Position numbers and translations under genes: made by a program. This document shows positions 16,927-56,461 of a stretch of 64,000 nucleotides of DNA, in pieces. Under the pieces are notes generated by a model. That model saw nothing but the letters and a program-made list of their open reading frames with translations. It did not search any database and was not told the origin of the DNA. Every line of letters begins with the position of its first letter. Positions within the stretch are counted from its first letter, which is position 1. This DNA comes from Malacoraja senta (lineage: Eukaryota): positions 9,424,001-9,488,000 of the forward strand of contig CM075980.1 of the NCBI GenBank assembly GCA_038087875.1, in the 5' to 3' direction.

Positions 16927-16989
16927 GAGAAATTCGAAAGGGCTCAAAACCGCACTTGTGCAGCAAAATATTCCTTTATCACCTTCGAC

Positions 16990-17035: not shown

Positions 17036-17131
17036 GTGAGTCGAGGGCAGAATGATTAATACTGTATCGTTTTACATTCTGCTGTGTTTTTTTCTAATGG
17101 TTCTGTATATTTATCTGTTTTTTTCTATCAG

Positions 17132-20147: not shown

Positions 20148-20326
20148 TTCAAAGGATGAAATTCCCGATTTGCTACATTTCTTTGTAAATTAATCCAATA
20201 TTCAGATATCGAATGTTCGCTTTAACAGGGTATTTGTTCAAACGCAGCACGTGTGCATTTTGTTGCCTTGTATGCGCTGTCCGTATTTTACGATGAACTG
20301 AAAAACAATAATGTAACATTTAATGC

Positions 20327-20332
20327 AATAAA
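20327..20332 (+). terminator. Candidate polyadenylation signal, cluster 1
   Basis: AATAAA 180 nt after the C stop codon; conserved at 40026-40031 in cluster 2. A second AATAAA lies at 20397-20402. Confidence 0.6.
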
Positions 20333-34800: not shown

Positions 34801-35045
34801 CGCTCGGCGAAACATCCATTCCACATCCACTCTATCCAGGCCTTCACAATTCGGTAAATTTCAATGAGGTCTCTCCCCTCGCATCCTCATAAACTATATA
34901 GCGAGCACGGATTCAGTGCCGTCAAACGCTCATCACACGTTAACTCAATTATCCCTGGGATCAGCCTCGTAAACCTCCTCTGGACCCTCTCCAACGCCAG
35001 CTCATCCTTCCTCAGATTGGAGCCCAAAACTGCTCACTACAATCC

Positions 35046-35554
35046 ATATAACCATATAACCATATAACCATAACAGCACGGAAACAGGCCATCTCGGCCC
35101 TTCAAGTCCGTGCCGAACATTTTTTTAAATTTCTTTTAAAATTAAAAATAAATACTTCCCCCTAGTCCCATCTACCTGCACTCAGACCATAACCCTCCAT
35201 TCCTTTCCCGCCCATATACCCATCCAATCTATTTTTAAAGGATAACATCGAACCTGCCTCCACCACTTCCACTGGAAGCTCATTCCACACAGCTACCATT
35301 CTCTGAGTAAAGAAGTTCCCCCTAATGTTCCCCCTAAACTTCTGTCCCTTAATTCTCAAGTCATGTCCCCTTGTTTGAATCTTCCCTACTCTCAATGGGA
35401 AAAGCTTATCCACGTCCACTCTGTCTAACCCGCTCATAATTGTAAAGACCTCTATCAAGTCCCCTCTTAACCTTCTGCGCTCCAAAGAATAAAGACCTAA
35501 CTTGTTCAACCTTTCTCTGTAACTTAGTTGCTGAAACCCAGGCAAAATTCTAGT
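35046..35554 (-). mobile_element. 5'-truncated CR1 3' end inserted into an older CR1 fragment
   Basis: Minus ORF 35162-35545 (..LNKLGLYSLERRRLRGDLIE..WNELP..); tail appears as (ATATAACC)n on +. Absent at the orthologous position ~15999/16000 in unit 1. Confidence 0.9.
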
Positions 35555-36493
35555 AAATGCGGTCTGACCAGTGCCTTAGAAAGGCTCAGCATTACATCCC
35601 TGTTTTTGTATTTTGTTTTTGTGTTCTGGCACTCTCGAAAGAAATGCTTTCCTTGCTACCGACTGGTAAATTAACTTTTGGGGAATCCTGCACCCTCACT
35701 CCTGAGCCCCTTTGCTCTCTCTTTATCAACAACATTTAAACTTTTGCGAGATAACCTGGATCAATTTGTCAGTACCCTTTATATCGAATTGGTAACAGCT
35801 TACAATATTTCTCCAGGACAGATGTGCAACCAACTGGCTTGCGGCTGACGACTTCCTGTCCCTCTTCCTTTCTTGATGAAAATGAATACCAAGGAACGTC
35901 CATGGTAGTTTTGAAATAAATAAAACTCAAATCAATGAATTCAGTACTGCAATGGAATGAATTAAGACTCTAGAATGAAATACAAAACATCTTAACTCCC
36001 TGTCAGCCGGTGGCTCTATCGACTTCCTAATGATTGCAACTTTTGTGAGTTTGTTCCTTGCTTTCGTGTCTGCAGCCGTTTCTGGGATGTTAAGTCCATG
36101 TTCTGTAGAGCATACCGATGAAAAATTACCATTTAAATTATCTGTCATCTTCATATTCCCCTTTAATTATACGACTGCGAATTATTTGTAGGTAAAGGAC
36201 AAATGTATTATTTTATAATTATTTAGGAGCTTAAGGGGATTAGTGCAAAATCTCTCCACAGTCCCATCATCCAACACAGCTGACCCCTTTTACTCAGTAA
36301 ATAAGAACCTGCTCTCACACAACAGTTCCCATCTGAGTCTCAGAGATTCCCCCCCCCCCCTCCCCCCGCCGCCGTTGAGTTCACCGTTGTCTGCTATTCT
36401 CCTCCCACTTAAAACAATATGAATATTTCTTTCTCCCAAAGGGCTGGAGCTGCAGAAATATCATTTTACACCGAGCCAATAATTCAGTGAATC

Positions 36494-36565
36494 GATGTCA
36501 CGTGGATAAAGATTTTGCATGAATAATTAACAATTAGTGACGTTGAGATGCTGAAGACTTTAAAA
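36494..36565 (+). promoter_or_regulatory. IgL cluster 2 V promoter
   Basis: CACGTG 36499-36504, ATTTTGCAT 36512-36520 (octamer with an extra T), TGACGT 36538-36543, TTTAAAA 36559-36565. Confidence 0.75.
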
Positions 36566-36629
36566 GAGAAACTTCGAAAGGGCTCAAAATCGCACTTGTG
36601 TAGCAAAACATTCCTTTATCACCTTCAAC

Positions 36630-36675
36630 ATGGCTGAATGGGTTTGGGTTCTCGCCTTGGTGACCTGCTTCCACT
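36630..36675 (+). CDS. IGL: Ig lambda light chain cluster 2 leader exon
   Basis: MAEWVWVLALVTCFH+T, GTGAG donor at 36676, 94-nt intron. Confidence 0.94.
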
Positions 36676-36769
36676 GTGAGTAGAGCGCAGAATGATTAAT
36701 GTTGTATCGTTTTACATTCTGCTGTGTTTTTTCTAATGGTTCTGTATATTTATCTGTTTTTTCTATCAG

Positions 36770-37111
36770 CTATAAACGCGGAGATTACCTTGACTCAGGT
36801 CCAGTCTATATCAACATCGCCGGGGAAAACCATCAAAATCACCTGTACCCTGTCAGGGGGCAGCATCAGTAGCTGGTACACGAGCTGGTACTGGCAGAAG
36901 CCGGACAGCACCCCTGTCTTCGTGTGGTATCAAAGCTCCGACAGAGGCACCGGGATTCCGGACCGATTCACGGGTTCCGTGGACTCATCCATGAACCAAA
37001 TGCATTTAACCATCACCAACGTGCAATCGGAGGACGCTGCCGATTATTACTGTGGTGTGTGGGACAACAGTAAATTCACCTTTGGGAGAGGAACCAAACT
37101 GAATCTAAACA
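36770..37111 (+). CDS. IGL: Germline-joined VJ exon, lambda/type II, cluster 2 (intact)
   Basis: 342-nt phase1/phase1 exon: (S)INAEITLTQ..ITC..SISSWYTSWYWQKP..VFVWYQSSDRGTGIPDRF..DYYCGVWDNSKFTFGRGTKLNLN, GTAAGT donor at 37112. The WYWQ and PVFVW framework is typical of elasmobranch type II (lambda) chains. Confidence 0.96.
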
Positions 37112-39523
37112 GTAAGTAAAGTATTCACGGTGTGAAACACGAATCTTTGAACTTAGGTTTTGCTTTCCATCATAAATCGTAAGTAGAAAGATCCTATTAG
37201 ACCTAAGTAGAACACAACGGGTCAGGCAGCATCTCCGGTAGACGATGGGCAATGTTTCGTGTCGGAACCTTTGCGAGACTTTCCCGAAAGGAAATATCAT
37301 CTATCTATGTCCTCCAGAGATGCTGTCTGATCCGCTGGATTACTTCAGCACTTTGTGATGTACTCAAGCTGCCAACATTCGCGATTCCTTGTTTCTCCTA
37401 CGTGAACTTGTTTTTTTTTTATTATCCTTTACCTCCATCCCTACAACACTCCGAGAAATCTGCGCTCACCTAACCGTGGCTTCTTGATCATCGTGGAATT
37501 TAACGCCTTCACATACTGACAGCTGTGCTTCAAATGCGAAGTTGTTCAATTCTGGAATGATATCCTGAAGCTCTATTTTCCCCCTTTTTTCCCAGATGTT
37601 CATGAAACCTGCTCCTTTAACATAAATACTGATTCTCTGATTTGAAGTATCCTCAAGTGGCGGGTTTCGTCCGAAACTGCTGCTATTGATCACTTTACTT
37701 CAATATAAGCGTAATGCAAACGAAAATTGTTGCCGTTACTTGACGAAGTGCTCGGGAAATTATGAGATTTTATTAGCTTACGGTATATTGTGGACTCGGA
37801 GAATACCAAATCTGAGAGTGGGCCAAATAGAATCATTGGAAGCATTCAAAGGAAAGTTAATAAACATTTGGCAAGGGATGTTGGTGAATTTAAATGGGAT
37901 AGTTTTTAAATTGTAAATACCCATTAGGGCAAATTGCGCGAAGTTGATTTCTGATCATTTTAATAATACCATGAGGATGAAGTGGCATTTCGACAGGTTT
38001 ACTATACATGCGCTCCCTACAACAGCGCCAAAACTAATTGTCAGGGAAAAGGTAAAAAACTAATATTTAAACGCTTCGCACGGCACCATTTAAATTCCCT
38101 AGACGTGAAAGTGTGGAGGATTGTTGCAAGTCTGATTCAGCTCCAGGATTAGAAACAAGAGCAGAACCGTATTCGGGTTCATTTCTCGTTCAGCTAGCCA
38201 TTGCCACCTTAGCTGATCACATTTGTGTGGATATGCCGTCAGGCTCTTTGTACCCACCTTGTAGAACCTGCAAGGGATTTTGATGCTGGTTCTCCGTTTG
38301 TCAACGAGTGTATGGTGTAGCAGAAAACACAGAGAGTTCATTATGCTGTTAAACATGATCCCTCTGATTGTTGATGTTATTTACGGGCAGGCAGTTGGTA
38401 GATCGACATGTCAAAAAGCTTAAAAGAGCGAGACATGATTTTGCCATTTTCGGATAAATTAGTGCAGAAATGGGCACACAAGTATACGAGGTTATTGCTG
38501 AATTGCTCTGAATCGAAAGATTGGAAGGAAATAGTGCAGCGTCTTAAAATTCAGCATTAAGCATCAGTTGAAATGTTTTTTAAAGTTCGAATATGTTGGA
38601 TGTTAAACCCAAAGCTCTCTGGATATGTGTCAGAAGGAATCTGGATATGTGTCTGACCAAACCATGTCTTTAGTTTTACCTTTCATTTTTCTGACCGCCA
38701 CCATCCTTGAATCATGGACTTTCTGGACGATGTGGAAGATTCACTAATATGTAACATTCTAAAGACTATTCCGGGAAAGAATTGGGATTACTATTTAAAC
38801 AAGCATTAATTTGGAAATGCTGCTCATTCTGCCAGGATGAGTTGTAATTCCATTTTTTTTCTGCCCGTTTCCATGATCTGAAGAAAATCGTAGGCTACAT
38901 GCTTTACCAAACCTCGGATGTATCAAATGAGGTTTATATATCAACGGTATTTATAAAGCATGTGACGAAGGATGTACACGGCCATGGAGCCACGGAGATA
39001 TGCAGCGGTGGAACAGACCTTAGGTCCACCTATTTCATGCCGACCGAGGTGCCCTACTTGAGCTGGTCCCATTTGCGTGTGCCAGGCCCATATCTCTTTG
39101 AACCTTTCTTATCCAAGTATTAATTCAAATGTTTTTTTTAAATGGTGTTATTGTACCTGCCTCATCAACTTCGCCGGGGAACTCTTTCCATGGAGTCAAC
39201 GCATTATGTGTACAAATGTTGCACTGAACCTAAGCCCTCTAATTCTTCATTCTCCTACTATGGGGAAAACCTTATGTATTCCGTGCGCTAACCCTATGTA
39301 TTGCCCTCGCGATTTTGTACACAGCCATGCGATCACCCTTAGGTCTTCTACACTCCAAGGGCTAACTTCCTCGCATGTCCAATCTATGCCTATAGTTCAG
39401 GCGTTCGAAACCCGGCACCGTCGTCGTAAATCTTGTCTGGAGTCATTCCAGCTGAATCGATTCTGACTTTTAACGACAACTGATAAATAATTCACTTGTA
39501 CTTATTTCAATTCTTATTTGCAG

Positions 39524-39846
39524 GTCCGCGGCCTCCCACCGTTTCCATTCTGGCGCCATCAGTGGGTGAAGTCACCACAAAAAGTACCGCCACCCTGGTG
39601 TGTTTGGTGAGCGGGTTCAATCCGGGCGCTGTGGACATTGAATGGACCGTAGACGGCAGTGCGAGAAGTGACGGCGCTGCGACCAGCCGGGTCCAGCAGG
39701 AGAAGGACAACTCGTTCAGTGCGAGCAGTTACCTGACTCTGCCAGCCTCCGACTGGAACTCACACGACCTTTACTCCTGTGTGGTTAAACACGAAACCCA
39801 GGCAAACCCGATTAAGGCCAATATCGCCAGATCCAGTTGCCTCTAA
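39524..39846 (+). CDS. IGL: Ig lambda constant exon, cluster 2 (intact)
   Basis: Acceptor tttgcag, then (S)PRPPTVSILAPS..RSSCL*. L+VJ+C = 46+342+323 = 711 nt, giving 236 aa plus stop. Confidence 0.97.
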
Positions 39847-40025
39847 TTCAAAGGATCAAATTCCCGATTTGCTACATTTCTTTGTAAATTAATCCAATAT
39901 TCAGATATCGAATGTTCGCTTTAACAGGGTATTTGTTCAAACGTAGCACGTGTGCATTTTGTTGCCTTGAATGCGCTGTCCGTATTTTACGGTGAACTGA
40001 CAAATAATAATGTAACATTTAATGC

Positions 40026-40031
40026 AATAAA
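40026..40031 (+). terminator. Candidate polyadenylation signal, cluster 2
   Basis: AATAAA at the same offset from the stop codon as in cluster 1. Confidence 0.6.
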
Positions 40032-43000
40032 ACCGATTATTCTATTTACGATGCATCGTTGTCATTTTCTGTGCAAATGTCCTTGCCTTCAATCGAATAA
40101 AAACAATAATGTCCGATGATGCCAGTGTGTATAAACTGGCATTTTGTGAAACTTCGTTATATTTCAAATAAACTGCGTTTTCATGATTGATGATGATCCA
40201 TATGTTAGGACAGCTGAAGGGACTGCTTGCAAGTACCCCCCGATTGAAGAAATTAGGTGCAAATCCGTGTCTCCTATTTTGGATATCCCAGAAATACGGA
40301 AGTGCACTCTTGGCATTACGCTAATATGCTTAAAGTACCCAAATGTCTCCAATCGATCCGCACTAAATACCATGGAAAACGCGATGAAAAGTGTGGGTTG
40401 ACGAATTAGTTAACCGCGGCATTACCGTGGTCTTTAATCAGCTCAACATTATTTACCAGGTGGTCATATATTTAAACAGTATAACGAGAGGAATAAAGTT
40501 CAGGCTCGTAGGGGTGTGCGGTAGACTCATCTTGAAGGGGGGCTTCGCACCATTAATTAACCGAAGTATATGTCGTGATTCCCAGAAATAGGATAAACAG
40601 CTTTCGGGATATGACAACTGCTTGGATGTTCTTCTCTGGGAATAACAACAAATTTTAAACAGGGGGTATAAAGTATGAAAATTATGAAAATTATAAATTA
40701 TGAAAAAATAAATTATCCGATGTGGGTAAATCGTTTCTAAAGAGACCCTCTAGTGCGATGTCGATTTCCAGTCGTAAAATACATTTATAATTATAAAATA
40801 TACAACCTATTTGACAATATTGTTAGTAACAGGTTGGGGACGTCTCCTATCTTCTTTCACCCCTTCTTCCAGGGTTATCCTTCACTCCGTTCCCCCCTTA
40901 TTTTGTGGCTGATTCCCTTTTCACCCCTAGCCTTTGCCAATTAACCCCCTACCCCATCTGCTAATCAACCGCCTCTCACATGTATCCACCTATAACTTGG
41001 CAGGCTTTATCACACCTCATATCTATTTTCCAGCTTTCTCCCCTCGGTCCCAATTAGTGCAGAAGGGTCTCGACCTGAAACGATACCTATCCATTCCCTA
41101 ATCAGATGTTGCCTGCCCCGGCGAGTCATATATAATCCAATGGCGGATTCTTGTTTTGCTGGATCTCTAACCGTGACGGCATTCATGAGAATGTTTCTTG
41201 AGATCTGTAATCTCAATGCATGAGTGGGGCCTGATGGTTTCAGTCTGAAAATTGGCGTTCATCTGCTCTTTCTGATGTATATATTAGTTCTGGTCATACC
41301 GGGCTGCTTATTGCTATTCTCTTCTTATCGATGTATATTTCACAATATTTCTTAAATGATGATATCTTTTGCGCTAGTAATCAGGTGATTGAACCGTTTC
41401 CTCAACTGATCCTCCTGTTGTATGGTGCTCAGTTACAGATCGAAAAACATCATTTAAATACTGAAATCTAACTTCCAACATTTGTTATATTAATTTCCTA
41501 CTATATTTGCAATCATGCGAACATCGCAATGTTCGGTGATGACATGGTCCATTCATGGAGTGCTAACGGCCAAATATTTCAGTCAGAAACACCAATTCAT
41601 GGCTTATTTTCAAGCCCATTGGTGTTAATGATTGAGGTTAATAATTGAAGCAATGATTTGGAACTTTGCATTAAAATACGATGAAAACAGTTATAAATGG
41701 TGAGAGACGGTTACTGCTGACATACACAAAAGCACATGTACACGCATAAATGGAGGGTAGCTGGCAGGGAAATGGGGGCGGGAGTGGGTGGTGTGTAGGC
41801 GAGCGGGACCAGTCACCCCTGGCCCCTAAAATAATAGTTATTGAGCCGCTCAGAACGACCTCATTTTGTAGCACCGCTGTTGCACAAGTGAACATCTACT
41901 ACAAATTTCATTACTTCGCCATAAGAGCTCCCTTTGCCATTGAACCTATATTGTGTTAACTTGTGCTTAAGTGTTGAACTAATCTTAAGTAGTGAAGACC
42001 TCCGCAATACTTGAGAGACATTACTGCTTGTCAAAGCTGCTGATGGCATTCAATGTTTTTGAAAGCAACGACGTTCATGCAACCATATAAATTAATTCAC
42101 ATTTCGAAACACAACAAAAATATTGAAAATAAAGCTATATACAAATAGCAAATATAGCTACATACAACAGTAAATCTTACAGATGACAATTGAAAACATT
42201 GAAACAATCTCACTTGAGTAAAATACTGCTAATCACGTCAGTTAACCGTTTCCATCATTGACATTTCTCTCAATTCAAATGAATGGACTTGCCGTTCCGC
42301 TCCCGTTTAATGGACAAGTTCCTCAAAATAATTGTTGTTAAGTTCAGCAAATTCCTGCTCCATTGCCAAACTCCACCAAGAGTATAAATTTGAACGAAGG
42401 TAGAGATAATCGGTGAACCCAAATCAGCAAAGGTGATCTCTGTGCGCCGTTTGAACATTCATCGGTAGATAGTAGATGGCATTATTGTCTCACATATGTC
42501 TGAAGAAAAGTCTCGACCCGAAACGTCACTCATTCCTTCTCTCCAGAGATACTGCCTGTCCCGCAGTTACTCGAGCTTTTTATGTCTATCTTCGGTTTAA
42601 ACCAGCATCTGTAGTTCCCTCCTACACATATGTCCATACTTGTGAGCATTACAATTTATTGCAGAGATGATATACATTTACAGTCAATTGTATACAATAT
42701 CACGACAATGATATTGTTGCAAAATCCATATAAAATCCATAAACGTGAACGCATCCTAATGCATGCAATAGTGTGCATGCCCGTGACCTAATTACACCGA
42801 TTTAATAGGCGAGTATTGGTGCAGATGGTGTTGGATTAGGAAGGCGAATATCTTTTAATCCTTTGAATTTCTATACTAAGGATTAAGAAATTATGTATGC
42901 AATTATGTAAGTCAGATGATTTGACACAGGCACATAGAAAATATATATAATCTTAATGGTAAATCAGAGTTTCATATTCTTCAATTTAATATAATGATAA

Positions 43001-44018
43001 ATAGAATTTATGCAGTGCGTACTTTGTCCTACGTGAGTCAAATAAATGGAGGGTGGACATTATTGGTACAAACTCATATCCTGACATTTAGATGCAGCGT
43101 TGTACTTTCATATTGTGTTTGACCTGTGATGCAGCAGATTTTGGAGCAAGAGCCTGCAACACTAAAACATAATGCTGTCCTAACCATTAGTATTTTATTT
43201 ATCAAATAAACAACATTTTATTGATTTTATGCAGAGTGGGCTGAAAATAACTGGAAACACTTCAGTCTTTGTGTAAGAAGGAACTGCAGATGCTCGTTTA
43301 AACCGAAGATAGACGCAAAAAGCTGGTGTAAGTCAGCGGGTCAGACATCTTTGGAGCATCCCTGGAGAAAAGGAATAGAATCCCTTCTTCAGTGATTTCC
43401 AAAAACGGGCACCCAACTTTTACAATTCAAGTTTCTGACAATTTGTGGGGTATCGGTGACATTTCATAATTAGTATTCGAGGAGAACTTTTAAAATAGTG
43501 TACATATGCCAGTGCAAGTGTTATAACGTCATTGCAGATACGCTCCTCTCCTCCCTGCACTCCACCTGAATTCGCATCCATTTCTTTCACCCCCACCCCG
43601 GTCCCCTTCCAACAACATTCATCCTCAGGATTCACAATTCGCACTTTTTCTACCATTATCTCACTCTTTTCCTCTTTTCATCTCTGGCCTTGTCCAACCA
43701 TCCGCCAATTACCACCCCTTCACCTTTCACATCTCAGGCTTTGCCCTGATCCCACTTGTCTTTCAACTTTCTCACCCACCCCACCACAATCAGTCTCTAC
43801 GAAGGACCCAGATCCGAAACGCACTTAAAAATGTCACCTTCTTCGGAGATGCTGCCTGACTTGAGTTACTCAAGCACTTTGTGTCTAATTTGCAGATAAT
43901 CATTGTTTTATTAATCATTGTTAGCCCTATTCCGTCTGCTCTGCTTTCAATCATGGTTGATCTATCTTTCGTTCTCAACCACCTTCTCCTGCTTCCTCCT
44001 CAGAAACCCCGACACCCT

Positions 44019-44773
44019 GGGCCTGTCCCACTTTCACGACCTAATTCACGACCTTTTTTAAGGACCTGTCCCACTTTCCCGAGTTACTCACGAACTCTCC
44101 CGAGTTTTCCCCTTGATTCGAACCCTGAGAATTACGGTAATAGCCGTTCGTAGGTACTCGGGGCTATTTTTTTAAACTCGTGGACATTTTTCAACATGTT
44201 GAAAAAACGTTCCCACTTACCTGATGCCCCGAGTTCCTACGGCTGGCATTAAGAGCCGCTACGAAACATCTACGGACTCCATCGGGCTCCTACGAGCTCG
44301 CTACCGACATTACCCGACATTCCCCGAGTTCGAATCAAAGGGTAAACTCGGGAGAGTTCGTGAGTAACTCGGGAAAGTGGGACAGGGGCTTTACTCGTGG
44401 ACATTTTTCATCAGGCTAGAAAAACGCCCCGATCTACTTGATGCCACGTGCACCTACAGCCAGCATCACGACCTACCCACGACCCACCTACGACCCCGTG
44501 ACAACCATGCTGCGAGTATGTCAAGGACAAACTCGGCAGAGGTCGTGCATCAGGTTGTGCGCACGACCTGATTCACGAACTCGGTCGAGGTTGCCCTTGA
44601 CTCATACTCGCAGCATGGGCGTCACGAGGTCGTAGGAGGTCGAAGGAGGTGGTGGGTCGTAGCAGGGCGCCATGCTAGTCGTAGGTACTCGTGGTATCAA
44701 GTAGATCGGGGCGTTTTTCAACATGATAAAAAATGTCCACGCGTAAAAAAGTTAGTGAATTAGGTTGTGAAAG
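44019..44773. mobile_element. Outer PIF/Harbinger-type MITE (right terminus truncated)
   Basis: Left end GGGCCTGTCCCACTTTCACGACCTAATTCAC is inverted against GTGAATTAGGTTGTGAAAG at 44755-44773; further internal arms 44394-44450 vs 44690-44745. Confidence 0.7.
44061..44390. mobile_element. Inner PIF/Harbinger-type MITE with long TIRs and TTA target duplication
   Basis: CCTGTCCCACTTTCCCGAGTTACTCACGAACTCTCCCGAGTTT is perfectly inverted at 44346-44388; TTA flanks both sides (44058-44060 and 44391-44393). Confidence 0.88.
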
Positions 44774-45440
44774 AATGTGTCAACCTCTGCTTTAAAAATA
44801 TCCATTGATTTGGCCTTCGGAGCTGTCTGTGGCATTGAATTCCACGGTTTCACCACCGTCTGACGAAATAATTTTCTCCTCATCTCCTTTCTAAAGGTAT
44901 GTCCTTTTATTTGGAGGCTATGACCTCTGGTCCTAGTTTCTCCCACAAGTGGTAACATCCTCTTCACATCCACTCAGTCCACTCAGTCCAGGCCTTTCAC
45001 TTTTCCATAGGTTTGAATCAGGGCCCCCCTCATCCTTCCAAACTCCAGTGAGTACTAGGCAAACTAGTGCAATCAAACACTCTTCATATGTTAACCCAAT
45101 CATTCCTGTGATCATTCTCGTAAACATCATCTGGACCCTCTCAAATGCCAGCACATCCTTCATCATATATGGCGCCCCAAACTGCTCATAATACTCCAAT
45201 GCGGTGTGACCAGTGCTTCATAAAGCCTCAGCATTGCATACATTCTAGTCATCTAGAAATAAATGCTAGCATTGCATTTGCCTTCCTTAATACTGATTCA
45301 ACGTGCATTTTTTGGGGAATCCTGCACTACCAAGTCCCTTTGCATCTCTGATTTCTGAAATCTCTCCCCATTTAGAAAATAGTCTAAACCTTTATTCCTT
45401 ATACCAAAACGCATTACTTCACACTTCACTACGCTGTATT
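44774..45440 (-). mobile_element. Old CR1 RT C-terminal fragment
   Basis: Minus-strand pieces QFGAPYMMKDVLAFERVQMMFTRMI and GETRTRGHSLQIKG. Confidence 0.8.
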
Positions 45441-46593
45441 TCTAAGTATGTTATAGTATATACTTTCCATAAAACATCAGTTAAAGATTTAGAACGTGAT
45501 TTAAGAATATCATAAAACTTCACACTGCAACTGATTTGGAAGCTAGTGAATAAGGGTGAGTATATTGATTTAAATAACTTTTTAACCAAGATTTGTCTCA
45601 TTTGTTTCTCTTGAATAAATGTTTTCTATATCGCCTTGAATTGCCAAATGTTACTGACTTATTAATACATCCATGGCTTAATGAGAAAATCAAGACAAGG
45701 TAGATGATGGGCTGGAGTTACTGACCAACCAGCATTCACACGTGCCATAATTTCGAGCAATATTCTATATATTTTATAAACAAACATGGGGTAGTCAAAA
45801 CGTCAGAAAAACTGGTGATTTTTGCATTGATCTTTTTTCAGATTTTTGGTTGTAATTAATAATGAGTTTGATGAAATTCACAATTTGTATTTTATTTTAA
45901 ACTAACTTTAGTTATGAACTGCCGATTTACGAAGGGATGAATATGATGGAAAGTGAGAATGTTAACATAAAGAACAAATGCTAGAAAGAGTTAGCAGACC
46001 CGATACCATCCACGTGGAGAGAAAGGGGTGGCACTCTACCTCTTTCAATAGGTCCCCAATTGCTCAATGGTTCTTTATTGTCGCTAATGCAGTGCACAGT
46101 GAATTTCTTTTTGCATACGCACGTCGCCTTATTTAGGCGCAATTTACACAAAGAAACAGTCCATAGTTCAAAGTCAGGTCCACATGCTGGATGTACTGGA
46201 GAGCTCCAGATCCAAATAAGCCCAGGTAGCCCCAAGCTGTTGCAGACCCTTCTCCGACGCCCTCGACCGGCCTGGCCCACGGACAGACGTCCCTCTCCTC
46301 GTCCGACAGCCTCTGAGGGCAGCGGCACGCCAAGTCCTTCTTCGTGGCGGCGAGCCAGGCCTGTGCCGCACGTGACAGCGGGCGGCCCTCCAGGTCCGTC
46401 TTTGTTCGCGGCTACCCAGCAGATTATTAGTGGCGGCCGGCAGGGTCCGTCTTCATTCGTGGTGGTCCGTCTGTGTGCAGAATGTTCCAGTTCTATTCCG
46501 TGTCTGCCAATCTGTAAGGACAGGGGACTATAGCACCAATAATACAATACATAATACAAATTCACGCTCACGTACACTTGCTCCTACTTCCAG

Positions 46594-46754
46594 ACCCCCG
46601 CGCCCCCCCCCCCCCCCCACCCTCCATGCAGTGTCAATTGTACTCCTGTGTGGTTCAACACGAGACTCAGGCAAACCCGCTTCAGACAAACATCGTGAGA
46701 TCCGGTTGTAACAGGGTCACAAGCAACTTTAGGCCAAGGATCATGTCCCTGTAA
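46594..46754 (+). pseudogene. IGL: Orphan, internally deleted Ig lambda constant exon (mini-C), still in frame
   Basis: Pyrimidine tract + CAG acceptor (46591-46593). Phase-1 reading is (N)PRAPPPPPPSMQCQLYSCVVQHETQANPLQTNIVRSGCNRVTSNFRPRIMSL*. The LYSC..RSGC block is 58/72 nt and 18/24 aa identical to the cluster 2 C-terminus. Confidence 0.85.
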
Positions 46755-46990
46755 CCGTGACAGTGCCAGGAAAGTTCTCAATAAGCAAAATGGATAGGCC
46801 TTTCCTTTTGTGATCCACTGTACCTTTCATTAATCATTTACTCCTCGTGATATGGAAGCAGCGTAATCATTCAAATTTAGTTATGCCTCAAGAACGTGTA
46901 AATTTAAATTTACCTGTAGCATTGTTTCCATGGCAAGATGTACGGTGCTGTAAGGAAAAACAAAATGAGCAACCATTTAAATCCTCGAGA

Positions 46991-47830
46991 CTCCGGAAGT
47001 GGCGGCGCTGCCCTAGCAGCTGCGACTCGCCTGCAGTCCGTCTGTTTTTTGTTTTTTGTTTTTTTTCCTTTTGTCCCGTTTTAGTTAATTTTAGTTTATT
47101 AGGTTGTGTATGTGTGTGTGTTGGGGGGGGGGGGTGGAAGAAACATGTTTTTGGTCTTTTCCTTCGGGGGGATGCGACCTTTTCTTGTCGTATCCCCCGT
47201 CTCCGTCTCCGTCTGCGCTGAGGCCTAATGGCGGAGCTGACGGCGTCCAACTGGGACCGATCTCGAGGCTCCGGAGGCAGAGCCAGCCAGGACTTACCAA
47301 CGCGAGGCTGGCCGACTTCGGGACTGTGGCGGCGTTGCGGCGGCGGCGACCCGACTTCGGAGCCTCGGAGGCTCGACCGCGGGCTCAGTGGACGACATGG
47401 TCGGGAGCTCGCAGGTCACAGGTTGGTGACCTGTTTCTCCGGATCTCCCGCAATAACAGCTTCGTCCGCTGGACTGGAGGGCGGTAGCTTCGGCAGCTTC
47501 GACCGCCCCGGGCCGCGGAGTTTGAACTGACCCGTTCGCGGAGCTCGGATTCAGCTGCGGGACTGACTCACTTACCATCACCCGGTGGGGTCACAACATC
47601 GGAAGCCTGGATCGCCTCAGCGCAGAGGGAGAACAAGGAGGGAAGAGACAAGGAGACTTTTGCCTTCCATCACAGTGAGGAGGTGCCTGGTGGACTCACT
47701 GTGGTGGATGTTAAATCTGTGTTTATTGTGTGTTTTTGTTATTTTATTTTATGTTATGACTGCAAGGCACGACATTTCGTTCAGACTGAAAGGTCTGAAT
47801 GACAATAAAGGATCTTGAACTTGAACTTGA
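46991..47830 (+). mobile_element. Non-coding GC-rich retroposon with LINE-type 3' end
   Basis: Starts CTCCGGAAGTGGCGGCG; ends AATAAA (47804-47809) + (CTTGAA)n tail; no convincing ORF. A related reverse-oriented element is suspected at ~46030-46550. Confidence 0.55.
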
Positions 47831-48022
47831 GTCTATTCTAGTATTCAAAGAGATCAACGCTGTATCTGACTTGACTTAATCGTCGCACAGTTAAAAAGCA
47901 ATTAACATTTAAAAATAAGAAAGTGTAGCATGATTCTGAATGTTTGAAAAGTGAAATTTAAAAAGGCATCGGCTGACATTTCAGCCATTACAGCCGTTGG
48001 AGCAATACAACTTTAACAGTCA

Positions 48023-49203
48023 CTAGGCCCCGTTCCCCCGTTCCCCCCACGCAATATTTCACCAAACTGCGCATGCGCAGCTGACGGACCCGCAGGCGTG
48101 ACTGCCGCGTTCAAAGTTGTGCCGGTGACGGCAGAAATTAAGTTAAAGTTAATAAAGTGAATAGAGGACCCGTGGAGGCATTTGTAAAGGAGAACGAAAC
48201 TTACCCGTGGAGCCATTGGGTCCCCGTTGTGAGGCCAGGCAAGTACACGCGGAAAAAAAACATGGCGATGTGAAAGTCGATTGCAAGATGGCGGTAGGCC
48301 AACTGCGCAGGGGGCGGACCCATTGGGATCCCATTGTGACATAATTGTGACGTCGAACGCGGCTGATGGGCAGGGCGTGGAAAAGTGTTTATTTTTGTAA
48401 AGTTTAAAATGTCAATAACGTAAAATATACCATAAATCTGAAGGAAACTTGTTTCATTTACATCACAGGACAATGGTGTGAAAGGTGGGCCAAAAATTGT
48501 ACCGCTATCGTGTTCTGTTTTGGCAGAGTTTCGGGAACACACACACACACACACAAACAAACAAACAAACAATCAAAATGAGAGTTTTAGTAATATACTA
48601 GACCAAATGCAGGTCTGCTCCCCCAACGCAGCCGTGTCCTACCCGTAGCCCCCACGGGAGGCGCGGTCTTCCAACTCAAGCCGAAAAATTTAGAGTGTTT
48701 CAGTGAAGCTGATCACTGCTAGCTGAGCCATTGTGACGTCATCAGTTGAAGCTGGTCTTTTTAAATTTAAAGTCTTTTGATTTTTTTAAACTTTAATCAG
48801 TAATGTCGAAAAATAAAGCATAAAATGTTCAGTGAAGGTGTCTCTGCCTAGAGGGGAAAAATTTGAATCAGAATATGTAAACATCTTGTGAAAGTTGGCA
48901 TTTTAAAGCTTTAATCACAAATAATGTGAAATGTAGGATGAAATATACAGTGAAGCTGATCACTGCCAGTGTGACGTCATCAGTGAAAGCTGGTCATTTT
49001 AAATTCAAATTCTTTTCATGTTTTTAAACTTCTTACTTACTTTTAATCAGTAACAAGGAGAAATAAAGCATAAAATGTTCAGTGAAGGTGTTTTCGGCCT
49101 CGAGGGGAAAATGTCAATCAGAATATGTAAAAATGTTATTGTTATCGCGTAGTGTTTTCGCGAAGATGTAAAGACAACCACATATACACACACATATACA
49201 CAC
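48023..49203 (-). mobile_element. Two adjacent non-autonomous Helitron-like elements (tentative)
   Basis: Minus-strand CTAG|T ends at 48023-48026 and 48598-48601. The minus-strand 5' end TATATTACTAAAA is followed by (GTTT)n(GT)n (48537-48570). The second element has an internal ~240 bp diverged duplication. Confidence 0.4.
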
Positions 49204-49962
49204 TAACATAGAAACATAGAAACATAGAAAATAGGTGCAGGAGTAGGCCATTCGGCCCTTCGAGCCTGCACCGCCATTCAATATGATCATGGCTGATCAT
49301 CCAACTCAGTATCCTGTACCTGCTTTCTCTCCATACCCCCTGATCCCTTTAGCCACAAGGACCATATCTAACTCCCTCTTAAATATAGCCAATGAACTGG
49401 CCTCAACTACATTCTGTGGCAGAGAATTCCAGAGATTCACCACTCTGTGTGTAAAAAATGTTTTTCTCATCTCAGTCCTAAAAGATTTCCCCTTTATCCT
49501 TAAACTGTGACCCTTTGTTCTGGATTCCCCCAACATCGGGAACAATCTTCCTGCATCTAGCCTGTCCAACCCCTTAAGAATTTTGTAAGTTTCTATAAGA
49601 TCCCCCCTCAGTCTTCTAAATTCCAGCGAGTACAAGCCGAGTCTATCCAGTCTTTCCTCATATGAAAGTCCTGACATCCCAGGAATCAGTCTGGTGAACC
49701 TTCTCTGTACTCCCTCTATGGCAAAAATGTCCTTCCTCAGATTAGGAGACCAAAACTGCACGCAATACTCCAGGTGTGGTCTCACCAAGACCCCGTAAAA
49801 CTACAGTAGAACCTCCCTGCTCCTATACTCAAATCCTTTTGCTATGAATGCTAACATACCATTCGCTTTCTTCACTGCCTGCTGCACCTGCATGCCCACT
49901 TTCAATGACTGGTGTACCATGACACCCAGGTCTCGTTGCATCTCCCCTCCTAACAAGATCAG
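49204..49962 (-). mobile_element. Young CR1 3' portion (same subfamily as 25328-28881), runs into gap
   Basis: ORF 49306-49788 is nearly identical to the C-terminus of 27096-28781; near-identical 3' UTR; tail appears as (CATAGAAA)n on +. Confidence 0.93.
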
Positions 49963-50227
49963 NNNNNNNNNNNNNNNNNNNNNNNNNNNNNNNNNNNNNN
50001 NNNNNNNNNNNNNNNNNNNNNNNNNNNNNNNNNNNNNNNNNNNNNNNNNNNNNNNNNNNNNNNNNNNNNNNNNNNNNNNNNNNNNNNNNNNNNNNNNNNN
50101 NNNNNNNNNNNNNNNNNNNNNNNNNNNNNNNNNNNNNNNNNNNNNNNNNNNNNNNNNNNNNNNNNNNNNNNNNNNNNNNNNNNNNNNNNNNNNNNNNNNN
50201 NNNNNNNNNNNNNNNNNNNNNNNNNNN
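49963..50227. other. Assembly gap (265 N)
   Basis: Run of N. Confidence 0.99.
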
Positions 50228-52161
50228 AATGGGCTTCTTCTCTTGCTCATGTAAATGACCCATAAATAATATCAAAGTCGCTGCTTAGAATGTGGAATAT
50301 TTTGAAATAACTGACATCTGAGAATGTTTCTTCTTTTGGTTCCCGATATATGGTACATTAGCCGCAGTCACTGCCTCTCTGGGGAGTGGGGAACTCCCGA
50401 AAGCCACCTGTTCATAGTTGAGCTTGAGATGATTTATTGACAAGCTACCAGTAAATAACTAAAATGAAAATAGTATGCAAACACTGTTGTTATATTTAGC
50501 AAAAAGATATCCGGTTTCAGTTTTTTCATTGGTGTCAAATATGCCACAGTCGTAATGGGCACTATTCAGCACGGGTAAGCATAATCGGAGCTATAAGAAG
50601 ACAAATAAATAAATGGACCCTACAGATTTTATTTTGTGACAAAGCTACAGTAGTCCTGACATTTTGCTTTTAATATAGCAGTAGCTTATATATGTTTTCA
50701 CTCCCAGTACAGAGCGAAACTACATTATTCCCACCGTATCATCCTCTTATGTTCAATCTCCATTGGGGAGAAATCATATCAGTAACAGTGAACGGTAAGC
50801 AATGTATGAAAAAAACAATATAAATAAAAGACTAAATGCCATTCCAATGAAACGTTAAAAAAATATTTGCTTTTATGAATGCTATTTGAGCTGCTGCTGA
50901 GTATCCCTTTCATTTTGCTGACTTTATTCCAGATTTCCTGCATCAGCACTGGATTGTGACAAAGATTTTCACAGACATCCTCAAAGTACACAAAAATGGT
51001 GCTTTTGTTTATAAATTGTAGCCCAGTGCAAATTCAATTACTGGATTTATGGTGAATGGAGTGGCTGTTGGAGGATGATGCCCCGAAGAGATTTAACTGT
51101 TTTGAAGCAGAAACAGTGCGGAAATCTTTCAACCCTATTTGAATTAGATATCCATATTGGAGCAATGTAATGCAAAAGATCATGGTTACATATGTCTATT
51201 GAGCTATAGCAGTTTATTTTTTACACCCTTTCGCTCTTTATATGTGAATTCTGCATTCATTTTGTGTTTTCGTACTGAATGTTAGACATCTCGAGATCAT
51301 GATTCTCCACAGTGTGCAAAGTTTAATAACTTGGGCTCGCAGCCCAACAATTAGTGTGCTAAAATTCCATTTAGTATTGATTAGAATTATGTGTCTGAAG
51401 TTCCCGGGAAAGCTGAACATAGACAAATGATTTGAAGCATCCAAGGGGGGCATTGAGACAGAGACATTAACAATCCTGTTCTTTTTGACACATGCAGGAA
51501 AGCATCAGACCGTGCAACACAAACCTACTAACTCAGCATCTTTAGGAGCACACATTGTGTATTACAGGAATGCTAATATTTTCGACATGTCGAGGTACAG
51601 TGCCAATTGCGGAGGTTAATTTCAAACCAATTGTATTTTCAAGAAGGGAAGCACAGCAATATTGGAATGATAGTAAAGCATGTTAATCCTTATCCTTCCA
51701 GAATTTTGGTTGATTAATGTGGAACTATGAAACATCATATCAATCAAATCATGATCAGCAGTATGGGTAGTTTTTGGAAGTCTTGCAATCATTTGAGAAT
51801 AAACTTGAGAATCTGTTCTATTGTTACAAAATCTCACAGAAAATATAGAAAAACTTTTTAGCCCCATGTAGCATATACCTATGTAATCGAACATGGTGGA
51901 TATCAGTTTTTGCCAAACCATATATTCATTAGATATCATCTACTATCCTTATAAGGCAATTTTTGTACAGTTGGGTTAATTATTCAATTTTTTATTGCTA
52001 TCTTCATCATATTTTCCATTTGATTTGATCCCCAGTATTGTGTTTAATCCAATGTTTTGCCTGTCGCTTTCCTTTCTTTATCTCCCCCATCCTTCATAAT
52101 GTATTTCCTTGTTTGCTTGCATTCATCAGATGCTTCGGTGGTTTTCAGCGATCATCTAGAC

Positions 52162-52533
52162 CAGGGGTGGGGAACCTGCGGCCTGAAGGCCGCATGCAGC
52201 CTTCTAAGCTATTAAGTGTGGCCTTTTGAATGAATCCAAATTTTGTAGAACAAATCTTTTTATTATTATTAATATGTTTTTGTTCATCTTTTATTATTTT
52301 TATTTTAATCTTAAAATGAACATATTTAAAATACTAAAGAGTAAAAGAAGTTTCAACGAAATAATCCTCCCCGACTGACGGCCACAATTAAAACATTAGA
52401 AAGTCATGAGGGCTATTTTAACCAAATAATGTACATTTTGAAATATATCTAATTGACGTTTCTTGGATGCAGCCTTATTAGATTACAGCTAACTTAATGC
52501 GGCCTTCCACCATGAAAAGTTTCCCCACCCCTG
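52162..52533. mobile_element. Non-autonomous hAT (Charlie-like) element
   Basis: 13-bp perfect TIR CAGGGGTGGGGAA / TTCCCCACCCCTG; 8-bp TSD ATCTAGAC / ATCTAGTC (7/8), matching the NTCTAGAN preference of Charlie-type hATs. Confidence 0.9.
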
Positions 52534-53145
52534 ATCTAGTCGTTCTGCTGAATTATGCTCAATGGTATTTACAAATGTCCACAATTTCATTGTTCCTGAC
52601 ATTGCAGTGCAATGTAAACTATTATTGACGTACTTTGACAGGAATTAGTTTCAGAGACTAATTGCTGTAAGTGTGGAAGGGTGTCTCTGATTTGAATCAG
52701 AAATAGTCTTGCTGTAATTGGAACATTCTGCATATATCCAGATTTCTTACGTGCACTTGGCTTCTTTCCATCTTTCCAATAGATTCATAATAAATACGTT
52801 GGTTAGATTAACTCCTTGTACTTTTCGCTGTCATTCAACAAATATACGTTATGTGCCTTGCAAGGCTAATGCTGTTTATCTTTCTTGAGCCCCAGTGTCC
52901 AAACCTGACAGCAGTTATCCATTTGCAGTATCAGAAACTGTGTACCTAGGAGAATTAGCTCTTCATTGTTACGTCATCCTCTTGTGGCAAAGCTCAAAAT
53001 TCTACTCAAGGTTTGAATCAGCTTTCATTCATGCATGAACTTCTATATAGCGTTTGCTGCCTTTCGTATAATCTGCAGGGCTATATATGTTCTTCACTAT
53101 TCTAATCTTTCGGTAATCAAGTTCTGAACAATAATGTTTCCACTA

Positions 53146-55112
53146 TCAGATTCAGATTCAGATTCAGATTCAGATTCAACTTTATTGTCATTGTGCAGTG
53201 TACAGTACAGAGACAACGAAATGCAGTTAGCATCTCCCTAGAAGAGCGACATTAATATGAGCAGTAAATAAATAAATCTAATAAATCCTGGTGGGAGGAG
53301 TGTCCGGGGGGGGGGGTGTGATTGGCAGTCACCGAGGTACAGTGTTGAGTAGTGTAACCGCCGCAGGGAAGAAGCTGTTCCTGGACCTGCTGGTCCGGCA
53401 ACGGAGAGACCTGTAGCGCCTCCCGGATGGTAGGAGGGTAAACAGTCTGTGGTTGGGGTGAGAGCAGTCCTTGGCGATGCTGAGCGCCCTTCGCAGACAA
53501 CGCTTGCTTTGGACAGACTCAATGGTGGGGAGTGAGGAACCGGTGATGCGTTGGGCAGTTTTCACCACCCTCTGCAGTGCTTTCCGGTCGGAGACAGAGC
53601 AGTTGCCATACCATACTGTGATGCAGTTGGTAAGGATGCTCTCGATGGTGCAGCGGTAGAAGTTCACCAGAATCCGAGGAGACAGATGGACCTTCTTTAG
53701 TCTCCTCAGGAAGAAGAGACGCTGGTGAGCCTTCTTGACCAGAGTTGAGGTATTGTTGGTCCAAGAGAGGTCATCGGAGATGTTGACCCCCAGGAACCTG
53801 AAGCTGGAAACACGTTCCACCTCCCTCCCGTTAATGTGGATGGGGGTGTGCATGCCGCCCCTAGACTTCCTGAAGTCTACAATGAGCTCCTTGGTCTTCT
53901 TGGAGTTAAGGGCCAGGTTGTTGTCAGCGCACCATGCTGCTAGGAGCTGGACCTCCTCCCTATAGGCCGACTCATCGTTGTTGCTGATGAGGCCAATCAC
54001 CGTTGTATCATCTGCGTACTTGATGATGGTGTTAGTACCATGTACAGGTGTGCAGTCGTAGGTGAAGAGGGAGTAGAGGAGGGGGCTCAGCACACAGCCC
54101 TGTGGAACGCCGGTGTTCAGGGTGAGGGTTGAAGAGGTGTGCTTGTCTAACCTAACAGACTGGGGTCTGTTGGTTAGAAAGTCCAGTATCCAGTTGCAGA
54201 GGGAGGGGTCGATGCCCAGGTCACCGAGTTTGGTGATCAGTTTAGAGGGTATGATGGTGTTGAATGCTGAGCTGTAATCGATGAACAGCATTCTTACGTA
54301 AGTGTCTCTGTTGTCGAGGTGGGAGAGGGCGGAGTGAAGTGCCGTTGAGATGGCATCCTCCGTACTCCTGTTCTTGCGGTAGGCAAACTGATAGGGATCC
54401 AACGTGGGGGGTAGGCAGCCTTTGAGGTGTGCCAGGACCAGCCTCTCAAAGCACTTGGCGATGATGGGAGTAAGTGCAACTGGGCGGAAGTCGTTGAGGC
54501 TTGCCGCAGTGGAGTGTTTTGGCACCGGCACGATGGAGGTGGATTTAAGGCACGTGGGCACAACTGCTTGGGCAAGTGACAGGTTGAAGATGTCAGTCCA
54601 GACGTCTGTCAGCTGCGCAGCACAGGCCCTGAGGACGCGCCCGGGGATGCCGTCGGGGCCAGCAGCCTTACGTGCATTAGTCCTACTCAGTGCCACGTAC
54701 ACGTCGAAGGGGGTGAGTGAGAGGGGCTGGTGATCGGCAGGGAGCACCGCCTTGATGGCCAACTGCCGATTGTCCCTATCGAAACGGCCATAGAAGTGGT
54801 TGAGCTCCTCAAGGAAGGAGGCGTTACTGGATGTGGGGGTGGTGTTGGTGGGTCTAAAGTCCGTGATGGCCTGGATGCCTTGCCACATGCGTCGGGGGTC
54901 GGAGTTGTTGTTGAAGTGCTCCTCAATCCTGAGTTTATGGCAGTGCTTGGCCTTCTTTATGCCCTTCTTCAGGTTAGCCCTGGATGAACTATAGGCTCGG
55001 GCATCGCCTGACCTGAAAGCGGTGTCCCGTGCTTTCAGCAGTAGCCTGACCTCGCTGTTCATCCATGGCTTCTGATTCGGGAATATGGTCACCTGTTTGA
55101 GGGAGGTGACAC
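53146..55112 (-). mobile_element. 5'-truncated Rex1/Babar-clade LINE
   Basis: Minus-strand AATAAA (53181-53186) and (ATCTGA)n tail at 53146-53178; contains an uninterrupted RT ORF. Confidence 0.9.
53329..55092 (-). CDS. Reverse transcriptase ORF of the Rex1/Babar element (N-terminally truncated, no internal stops)
   Basis: 587 codons: [64 protein letters not shown]. Confidence 0.9.
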
Positions 55113-56461
55113 AAATACTTGGGGGTTCAGAATGGCTAGAATTTTGAAATGCATTTCAGGGATTTATCACCAAGATATTTTGCATCGATGAGATGAGACG
55201 AATCAAGGAAGACAGAAAATATGCCCTGGAAAATATTAGCGTATCCTAATGTGATAATCTTTGGAGCGAGAAGCTTCATCAGATCCTGTATATGAACTTT
55301 ATTTTTCTCTCCATGGAAGTTGCTTGATAGCAGAGCTTCTGAATAGTCCTAATCTATATTGTATCATCTTATTCCCTTACTTGCTAGATACATGCCTATT
55401 CTCTACCTATCTGCATTCGCATGTAGCCTCCCTTTGTCATCTTCAGAGCTTTGGCTGATTAGACAGCAAGCTTAAAAACATAATGTAGGTGCCTTATCCG
55501 ATTTATCTATGTAAACTAATTGGCTGCACACCATTATAACACTGAAGAAAATGGACAATCGTCTACATGATAATACAATTGGGAGAATTAACTAACTGGA
55601 TGAGTTCACAAATTTGATTTAGTCAGGAAAAGAAGAAATTTGTGTCGCGGGTTGACATTTGACATTTGAAAGGGCTGTGGCACGAAATTTAATATTTACA
55701 ATCACAGTTCACTTGGTCACATTTAGTCGTATCTGGTCAATAACGCAATGAGCTAAAGGATCCTACAATAATACCCACTGTATGCCCACTAAGAATGGAA
55801 AAACGTACATGTTTCCTTTTCCAATTTAAAACAATCCTTTACCTAATTATCTCTGGATCCTTCATCCTCATCTGCAATAAAAGTGCAAGGACGCTTGCCA
55901 TTCTGATCGGACAATACTGATGGTCTCTGCTGCTTCTGTGCCTTCCTTTATCCCATTAGACCAAACTTCCTCTCCTTTTCATCTCTAGCCTTTGCTAAAT
56001 TTGGACCCCAGTTGCTAAAAATGTATACTCCATCTCCAGGTCCCTTACCGATGTTTCTGTCCTAGGCTTCCTGTATTTCCAGGGTGAACAGGGAAAATGG
56101 CGGAAATGCACCTCAAATTCCACTGGGGTTGCTTACAACCTAACGGAAGATAGACACAAAAAGCTAGAGTAACTCAGCAGGTCAGACATCATCTCTGAGG
56201 AAAAGGGGTGTCGGGCCAAGACCTTTCTTCAGACCTCATGAGAGTCAGGGGAAAGGGAAACTAGAAAGATAGACGATGATACAGAGAGACAGAACAAATT
56301 AACAAAAGATATGCAAAAAGTAACGATGGAAAGGAAACAGACCATTATTAGCTGTGGCGTAGAAAACGAGTTACAGACAATGAAACTCACCAAGAAGACA
56401 GTGAAACTAGTACAACAACTGGGGTGGGGGTTTGAATCGTCCAATTTTGAGGTATCCCTTA

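What the first reader, a model, noticed from the sequence alone, without database searches (positions are those of the whole stretch)
46594..46754. Orphan mini-C-lambda exon: 67 codons removed, yet acceptor, phase and reading frame preserved
Seen: an intact splice acceptor, the PRAP start of a C exon, a 16-C run, then a direct jump to the last two strands (LYSCVVQHETQANPLQTNIVRSGC). The normal stop is lost, adding a 14-aa tail. In the phase used by J donors it is open end to end (53 aa). The B-strand Cys and core Trp are gone, a new Cys appears (MQCQLYSC) and the heavy-chain-linking Cys position is kept. The retained block differs from C1/C2 by silent and conservative changes, so it comes from a distinct, once-functional paralogue. 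I found no leader, VJ or promoter module between 41.2 and 46.5 kb. Inference: probably a relic of a deleted cluster. However, the cluster 2 J donor (37112) skipping its own C could splice to it and yield a V domain with a proline linker and Cys-containing tail, i.e. a truncated or surrogate-like light chain.
Basis: partly seen in the sequence, partly recalled or inferred. Interest (0 to 1): 0.72.

Follow-up and report, generated by a model that had tools for sequence, protein, structure and literature searches.

The report
Dead fragment of antibody lambda C exon
This is a decayed leftover of a skate antibody light-chain constant exon that lost 67 codons from its middle; it looks spliceable on paper, but the evidence gathered here says it is an ordinary gene relic, not a new kind of light chain.

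Summary
The sequence is as described. An AG acceptor at 46592-93 is followed by a lambda C-exon start, a run of 16 C, about 22 nt of unclear origin, and the last 24 codons of a lambda C exon. The normal stop is lost and a 14-codon tail follows. Both ends are truly homologous to skate lambda C exons. The 3' block is 81-86% identical over 68-70 nt to nine C exons. The first 14 exon bases match an Amblyraja "PRAP"-type C exon at 13 of 14 positions.

I read it as a non-functional relic:
- The orthologous Leucoraja erinacea locus is collinear on both sides but lacks the whole 5-kb segment that carries it.
- No V, J or leader remnant lies nearby.
- No AATAAA or ATTAAA occurs within 900 nt downstream; C1 and C2 each have three within 330 nt.
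- A Lys kept in 112 of 116 chondrichthyan lambda chains is Gln here.
- All 116 chains stop one residue after the last Cys; this one does not.
- The Ig fold cannot form, and the frame hangs on an unverified C16 homopolymer.

DNA contigs from two samples rule out a hidden full-length exon. No RNA evidence was obtainable. Earlier scan notes describe this genome's lambda array but not this relic. Interest is low.

The parts
46571..46593 (+). Splice-acceptor-like end: pyrimidine-rich tract ending in AG (46592-93)
   Evidence: 15 of 20 pyrimidines at -23..-4, the same as C1 and C2. The sequence upstream has no detectable similarity to C1-type introns (nhmmer) or to the introns of five other skate subfamilies.
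46594..46607 (+). Genuine 5' end of a lambda C exon (phase 1; AC + Pro-Arg-Ala-Pro)
   Evidence: 13 of 14 nt identical to the exon start of the A. radiata P0026-type C exon in L006. The pattern YAG RY CCN CGN NCN CC is found only at C1, C2 and here in the window, with about 0 expected. PRAP starts the C region in several skate subfamilies.
46603..46618 (+). C16 homopolymer; it decides the reading frame
   Evidence: Read directly. TRF reports a C tract at 46595-46622. Short-read contigs of X1 and X2 end inside 46590-46632, so the length is not verified.
46619..46640 (+). Junction stretch of uncertain origin (Pro-Pro-Ser-Met-Gln-Cys-Gln-Leu)
   Evidence: Ungapped identity to nine C exons is at chance level: 12-13 of 41 over 46600-46640. 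Two equally weak placements are possible, at the exon's P-S-M or at P-A-S before the F strand.
46641..46710 (+). Retained F-G strand block of a lambda C exon, through the heavy-chain-linking Cys
   Evidence: blastn gives 83.8% identity to C1/C2 and 81-86% to the L001-L007 C exons, with E 1e-13 to 1e-17. tblastn gives 81% to a Pristis lambda chain, E 2e-10.
46711..46754 (+). Read-through tail (14 codons) and a new TAA stop
   Evidence: All 116 chondrichthyan lambda chains compared stop one residue after the last Cys; here the stop is gone. No AATAAA or ATTAAA lies between 46709 and 47600.
43567..48600 (.). 5-kb segment carrying the relic, absent from the orthologous L. erinacea locus
   Evidence: L002 is collinear with window 39478-43567 (89.6%) and with 48587/48681-56281. 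Between these it holds only about 180 bp, including an (ATT)n run. The segment contains high-copy repeats at 45240-45505 and 46969-47900 around single-copy DNA at 45506-46969.
39524..39846 (+). Intact C exon of cluster 2, used as reference
   Evidence: Pfam C1-set, E 3.8e-25. 94% identical to A. radiata lambda chains. AATAAA signals at 40026, 40096 and 40167.
37106..37117 (+). J2 splice donor (last exon base A at 37111, then GTAAGT)
   Evidence: Read directly. The phase-1 donor gives AGT (Ser) with C2 and would give AAC (Asn) with the relic.

Best explanation
It is a non-functional pseudo-exon: what remains of the constant exon of a skate Ig lambda (type II) light-chain cluster from a subfamily different from its neighbours. 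A genomic copy of that C exon kept its acceptor, its first 14 nt and its last 70 nt. It lost about 201 nt from the middle, which carried the B-strand Cys, the core Trp and strands A' to E. The C-rich exon start grew into a C16 run, probably by slippage. The stop codon decayed. The V-J exon, the leader and most of the intron are gone or unrecognisable.

Shown here: both ends are homologous to lambda C exons, the deletion is real in the DNA of two samples, the segment is absent from the L. erinacea orthologous locus, and constraint looks relaxed. Inferred: no function, slippage as the origin of the C run, and whether the cluster decayed in place or the fragment arrived with the 5-kb segment.

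The open phase-1 frame is best read as coincidence. An in-frame deletion has a 1 in 3 chance. The C run cannot contain stops. A 14-codon tail without a stop has roughly even odds.
For: - Homology of the 3' block and of the exon start.
- The missing middle is not present in degenerate form, and Pfam finds no Ig domain in the 52-aa frame.
- No V, J or leader remnant between 41.2 and 60.4 kb.
- The orthologous L. erinacea locus lacks the 5-kb segment.
- K to Q at a site that is K in 112 of 116 chains and Q in none, and loss of a stop position kept in 116 of 116.
- No canonical poly(A) signal within 900 nt, against three behind each of C1 and C2.
- Contigs of two samples reach the C run from both sides, with single-copy depth and no full-length exon.
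- No RNA run holds it, and no protein in the 5.8-billion collection shares its words.
- Background: lambda genes of cartilaginous fish are multiple germline-joined VJ-C clusters (PMC5192425).
Against: - The acceptor looks as good as those of C1 and C2, and the phase-1 frame is open from end to end, with the heavy-chain-linking Cys kept. That is what a used exon would also show.
- Expression was not tested with spleen or other lymphoid RNA of this species.
- A related species (organism B) keeps a roughly 92% copy of the upstream single-copy DNA 45750-46524. The segment is therefore not unique to this genome, and its absence from L. erinacea could be a secondary loss.
Confidence: 0.86

Rival explanations
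1. It is a working alternative terminal exon. A lambda J donor (J2 at 37111, or another upstream) skips its own C exon and splices to 46594. The product is a V domain with a proline linker and a Cys-bearing tail, a truncated or surrogate-like light chain.
For: The acceptor-like site is intact, the phase-1 frame is open and the terminal Cys is kept. Cartilaginous fish have no known surrogate light chain (PMC9614664), so the niche is open.
Against: - C2 lies between, with an equally good acceptor and three AATAAA signals that must be read through.
- There is no poly(A) signal behind the relic.
- The segment is absent from the L. erinacea orthologous locus.
- The near-invariant Lys is replaced and the stop is lost.
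- The frame rests on a mutable C16 tract.
- No RNA run or predicted protein was found.
Confidence: 0.04
2. It is an assembly artefact. A full-length C exon was collapsed at the C-rich stretch, or the C-run length, and hence the open frame, is a consensus error.
For: Homopolymers of 16 are error-prone. The short-read contigs of both holder runs stop inside 46590-46632, so the run length is unverified.
Against: - In two samples the left contig (from 46172) runs 27-29 letters past 46589.
- The right contig (to 46979/47021) starts 32-37 letters before 46633.
- The two therefore overlap within the C run at single-copy depth, leaving no room for a hidden 200-bp insert.
- The unlaid contig ends were not shown, so this fits the assembly but does not prove the exact length.
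Confidence: 0.04
3. On origin only: the fragment did not decay in place. It arrived as part of a 5-kb repeat-rich insertion, through a segmental copy, transposon-associated transduction or repair filler that captured a piece of a distant lambda cluster.
For: The whole of 43567-48600 is missing at the orthologous L. erinacea site. High-copy repeats flank the 1.46-kb single-copy piece. No V/J remnant is present. The exon type differs from the neighbouring clusters.
Against: - It lies on the same strand as all three clusters and inside the array.
- Both species carry different private sequence and microsatellites at the site, which fits an unstable spot with loss in L. erinacea just as well.
- Organism B holds the upstream flank.
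- I found no target-site duplication or transposon end at the boundaries.
Confidence: 0.3

Closest known systems
Germline-joined Ig lambda (type II) VJ-C clusters of skates and sharks
   Same: - It lies inside such an array, on the same strand.
- Its exon start (phase 1, Pro-Arg-Ala-Pro) and its last 24 codons are those of a lambda C exon.
- The neighbouring clusters 1-3 have fused VJ exons, as described for all cartilaginous-fish lambda genes (PMC5192425).
   Different: - There is no V-J exon and no leader.
- 67 of 106 codons are missing.
- There is no Ig fold, no normal stop and no poly(A) signal.
Partly deleted, unprocessed Ig constant-region pseudogenes in multigene Ig loci (for example the defective J-C lambda units of the human IGL locus; recalled from my own knowledge, not checked here)
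   Same: It is a genomic, intron-bearing remnant of a duplicated C gene. It carries an internal deletion and sits among working copies.
   Different: It is far more reduced, with only about 84 nt of recognisable exon. It also lacks a partner J.
Mammalian surrogate light chain (lambda5/IGLL1 and VpreB)
   Same: This is a resemblance on paper only. The relic is a lambda-derived piece that would add a non-Ig tail and keep the Cys that links to the heavy chain.
   Different: - Lambda5 keeps a complete C-lambda domain plus a J-like strand, and VpreB is a separate V-like gene.
- Both are conserved and expressed, and are reported to have evolved in eutherian mammals (PMC9614664).
- Here there is no domain, no conservation in L. 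erinacea and no expression evidence.

Membership tests
Ig lambda C exon (C1-set domain), functional | Complete C1-set Ig domain with the B-strand Cys, core Trp and F-strand Cys | tested here: not met
   Pfam C1-set hits C2 at E 3.8e-25 but gives nothing for the 52-aa frame. Only the F-G strands remain, and 201 nt are absent.
Ig lambda C exon (C1-set domain), functional | Phase-1 splice acceptor followed by the conserved exon start (x-Pro-Arg/Gln-x-Pro) | tested here: met
   AG at 46592-93, then AC CCC CGC GCC CCC. This is 13 of 14 identical to the L006 exon start, and the pattern occurs only at C1, C2 and here.
Ig lambda C exon (C1-set domain), functional | Terminal Cys followed by one residue and a stop, then poly(A) signals within a few hundred nt | tested here: not met
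   The Cys is kept but the frame runs on for 15 residues, whereas 116 of 116 chains stop after one. No AATAAA or ATTAAA lies between 46709 and 47600.
Ig lambda C exon (C1-set domain), functional | A partner VJ exon and leader 2-3 kb upstream on the same strand | tested here: not met
   tblastn of 122 chondrichthyan lambda chains against 41.2-60.4 kb gives only noise apart from the relic itself.
Unprocessed (genomic) pseudogene relic | Derived from genomic DNA, not from mRNA: intron-side sequence kept, no poly(A) tail | tested here: met
   The acceptor AG and pyrimidine tract directly precede the exon start. No A-rich tail follows.
Unprocessed (genomic) pseudogene relic | Signs of relaxed constraint and lack of conservation at the orthologous site | tested here: met
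   K to Q at a near-invariant site and loss of the stop. The segment is absent from the orthologous L. erinacea locus. Only one orthologous locus could be examined.
Surrogate-light-chain-like component | Expressed in developing B cells and pairs with the heavy chain | not testable with these tools
   No RNA run holding the stretch was found.

The most novel reading that the evidence does not exclude
The mini-exon is occasionally used as an alternative last exon of the upstream pre-joined lambda gene. This would give a V-only light chain with a polyproline linker and a Cys tail that could link to the heavy chain, a lineage-restricted skate analogue of a surrogate or truncated light chain.
Probability: 0.03. 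Interest if true: 0.6.

Novelty: new member of a known kind. Interest (0 to 1): 0.12.

Why it matters
It matters little on its own. It is one more decayed piece in a large, fast-turning-over Ig lambda array. It documents that whole clusters are lost and that subfamilies were once interspersed: a PRAP-type C exon relic sits among PRPP-type clusters. It is also a reminder for annotation pipelines that an apparently spliceable, open mini-exon can arise by chance. Only if spliced transcripts were found would it bear on the open question of whether cartilaginous fish have any surrogate-like light chain.

Tried and rejected
- **Local alignment of the 5' side and the 3' flank against C1/C2, with shuffles.** Not significant. 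The 5' homology was settled only by the pattern count and by comparison with other subfamilies.
- **nhmmer profile of the last 400 nt of C1-type introns against 43567-46593.** No hit. blastn of 45500-47000 against nine skate lambda loci found no flank similarity. The parent subfamily's intron is therefore unidentified.
- **The apparent collinear upstream flank, 44780-45239 against 15591-16042.** Rejected as evidence for a cluster remnant. It belongs to a high-copy repeat.
- **A tblastn hit suggesting a degenerate full C exon upstream (46347-46712).** It rests on the last 25 residues only.
- **Weak tblastn hits at 43807-43896 and 45057-45131.** Noise.
- **Parent subfamily.** The 3' block is about equally distant from all sampled types, at 81-86%. 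Only the exon start points to a PRAP type.
- **Search for the A. radiata orthologue of the cluster 2-3 spacer.** I tried via P0095, P0106 and P0123. All three loci (L001, L008, L009) are followed by another C1-type unit, so none is the right boundary. No skate orthologue of V3 was among the hits. Insertion versus loss therefore stays unpolarised.
- **Protein search with the relic's frame.** No candidate.
- **Rfam and tRNA scans of 43-49.9 kb.** Nothing relevant.
- **Earlier scan notes, searched by sequence and by words.** Nothing on this relic.

Full report
**Setting**

The window holds three same-strand, germline-joined lambda (type II) light-chain clusters.
- Cluster 1: VJ near 17.1-17.5 kb, C exon ending near 20.14 kb.
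- Cluster 2: VJ 36.7-37.11 kb, C exon 39524-39846.
- Cluster 3: a more divergent VJ at 60.5-61.2 kb, whose C exon lies beyond the window.

C2 is a C1-set domain (Pfam E 3.8e-25). It is 92-94% identical to lambda chains of Amblyraja radiata, Leucoraja erinacea and Rhinoraja longicauda. The genome is therefore a skate, but none of these three species. Earlier notes of this scan describe the same array as ordinary pre-joined skate lambda genes. This matches the literature: lambda genes are germline-joined in all cartilaginous fish studied (PMC5192425).

**What is at 46594-46754**

- A pyrimidine-rich tract (15 of 20 Y, as at C1 and C2) ends in the AG at 46592-93.
- The exon-like part starts AC CCC CGC GCC CCC.
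- It runs into 16 consecutive C (46603-46618).
- Then come about 22 nt of unclear origin (46619-46640).
- Then come the last 24 codons of a lambda C exon (46641-46710), through the Cys that links to the heavy chain.

The usual stop is gone, and the frame runs for 14 more codons to a TAA at 46752-54. Against C2 exactly 201 nt, or 67 codons, are missing. The skate J donors end in A (AAC A|GTAAGT). A J2 junction would therefore read AAC (Asn), in phase with the open frame.

**Is it more than chance?**

Yes, at both ends.

The 3' block gives blastn E-values of 1e-13 to 1e-17. Identity is 83.8% to C1/C2 and 81-86% to C exons of five further skate subfamilies fetched from A. radiata and L. erinacea.

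The 5' end is too short and too C-rich to be significant by local alignment alone. Two other results support it.
- The acceptor-plus-Pro-Arg-x-Pro pattern occurs only three times in 128 kb of both strands, at C1, C2 and here, with about 0 expected.
- The first 14 exon bases are 13 of 14 identical to the exon start of the A. radiata P0026-type C exon in L006.

Several skate subfamilies begin their C region with PRAP, whereas the neighbours C1 and C2 begin with PRPP. The 3' block also carries states (NPLQT, IVRSGC) seen in other chondrichthyan lambdas but not in C1/C2.

The missing middle is not hidden upstream in degenerate form. No intron similarity to any sampled subfamily is detectable.

**Is the assembly right?**

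Two runs of the same species, from two samples (X1, X2), behave as DNA. Depth is even over non-genic single-copy stretches and enormous over repeats.

In both runs a contig covers 46172-46589 and continues 27-29 letters further. Another covers 46633-46979/47021 and starts 32-37 letters earlier. The two overlap inside the C run at single-copy depth, so a collapsed full-length exon is very unlikely.

The tool did not show the letters inside 46590-46632, so the length of 16 is not verified. The open frame depends on it.

**Context and conservation**

tblastn with 122 chondrichthyan lambda chains finds no V, J or leader remnant between 41.2 and 60.4 kb. An apparent collinear upstream flank (44780-45239) is a high-copy repeat.

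The relic sits in 1.46 kb of single-copy DNA (45506-46969), between very high-copy repeats at 45240-45505 and 46969-47900.

The most telling result comes from L. erinacea locus L002.
- It is orthologous to cluster 2 and its downstream spacer.
- It is collinear with window 39478-43567 at 89.6%.
- It is collinear again from about 48600 to 56281, at up to 92.5%.
- Between those points it has only about 180 bp, including an (ATT)n run, where this genome has 5 kb.

The mini-exon is thus not conserved at the orthologous site of another skate genus.

A third species (organism B) does hold a roughly 92% copy of 45750-46524. It shows nothing at 90% or more for 46703-46968. The segment is therefore older than this species, but its history is unresolved. 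I could not reach the A. radiata orthologue.

**Signs of decay**

- Among 116 chondrichthyan lambda chains, the Lys in C-V-V-K-H is kept in 112 and is never Gln. The relic has Gln.
- All 116 chains stop one residue after the last Cys. The relic reads on for 15.
- C1 and C2 each have three AATAAA signals within about 330 nt of their stop. The relic has no AATAAA or ATTAAA for 900 nt.
- The frame lacks the B-strand Cys and the core Trp, and Pfam sees no domain.
- A 16-base homopolymer inside a coding frame would be lost quickly to slippage.

**Expression**

No RNA run was found to hold the stretch. No predicted protein in the 5.8-billion collection shares its words. Both are weak negatives. For J2 to use this site, transcription would have to ignore the C2 acceptor and three poly(A) signals, then run 6.8 kb further.

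**Conclusion**

This is an unprocessed, internally deleted pseudo-exon of a lambda C gene of a PRAP-type subfamily, stranded between working clusters (confidence about 0.86).
- Whether it decayed in place or came with the 5-kb segment is open. I put insertion at about 0.3.
- The open frame is best explained by chance. An in-frame deletion has a 1 in 3 chance, a C run cannot hold stops, and the tail is short.
- The surrogate-like reading is not excluded, but I put it at 3-4%.

Noticed in passing
window 17395-17410: The cluster-1 VJ exon has one extra base compared with cluster 2 (GCTGCGGGATTATTAC against GCTGC-CGATTATTAC). This shifts the frame just before the conserved Tyr-Tyr-Cys. Cluster 1 is therefore a pseudogene, or there is a base-call error.
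   Followed up: partly
window 53148-55110 (ORF 53329-55092, minus strand): A LINE reverse-transcriptase ORF of 587 aa (Pfam RVT_1, E 9e-34) lies in a 1.96-kb stretch that is absent from the orthologous L. erinacea locus, where L002 21007/21008 are contiguous. This looks like a recent insertion.
   Followed up: partly
window 45240-45505 and 46969-47900: These are extremely high-copy repeats, with summed contig depth 10^3-10^6 against 4-19 for single-copy DNA. They are shared by runs of three skate species. The GC-rich part at 47100-47650 is the most abundant.
   Followed up: no
window 44489-44634: A palindromic hairpin gives sub-threshold matches to miRNA-precursor models on both strands (about 34 bits against gathering scores of 69-75). 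It may be a small inverted-repeat element.
   Followed up: no
window 7434-21459 and 22986-41164: Clusters 1 and 2 are part of a tandem duplication unit that is 87-94% identical over about 14-18 kb. The C exons are more alike than their flanks. Homology ends at 21459/41164.
   Followed up: partly
P0124 (Rhinoraja longicauda, 551 aa): One public gene model fuses two complete lambda light chains (L-VJ-C, a read-through spacer, then L-VJ-C) into one 'uncharacterized protein'. This is probably an annotation read-through between adjacent clusters.
   Followed up: no
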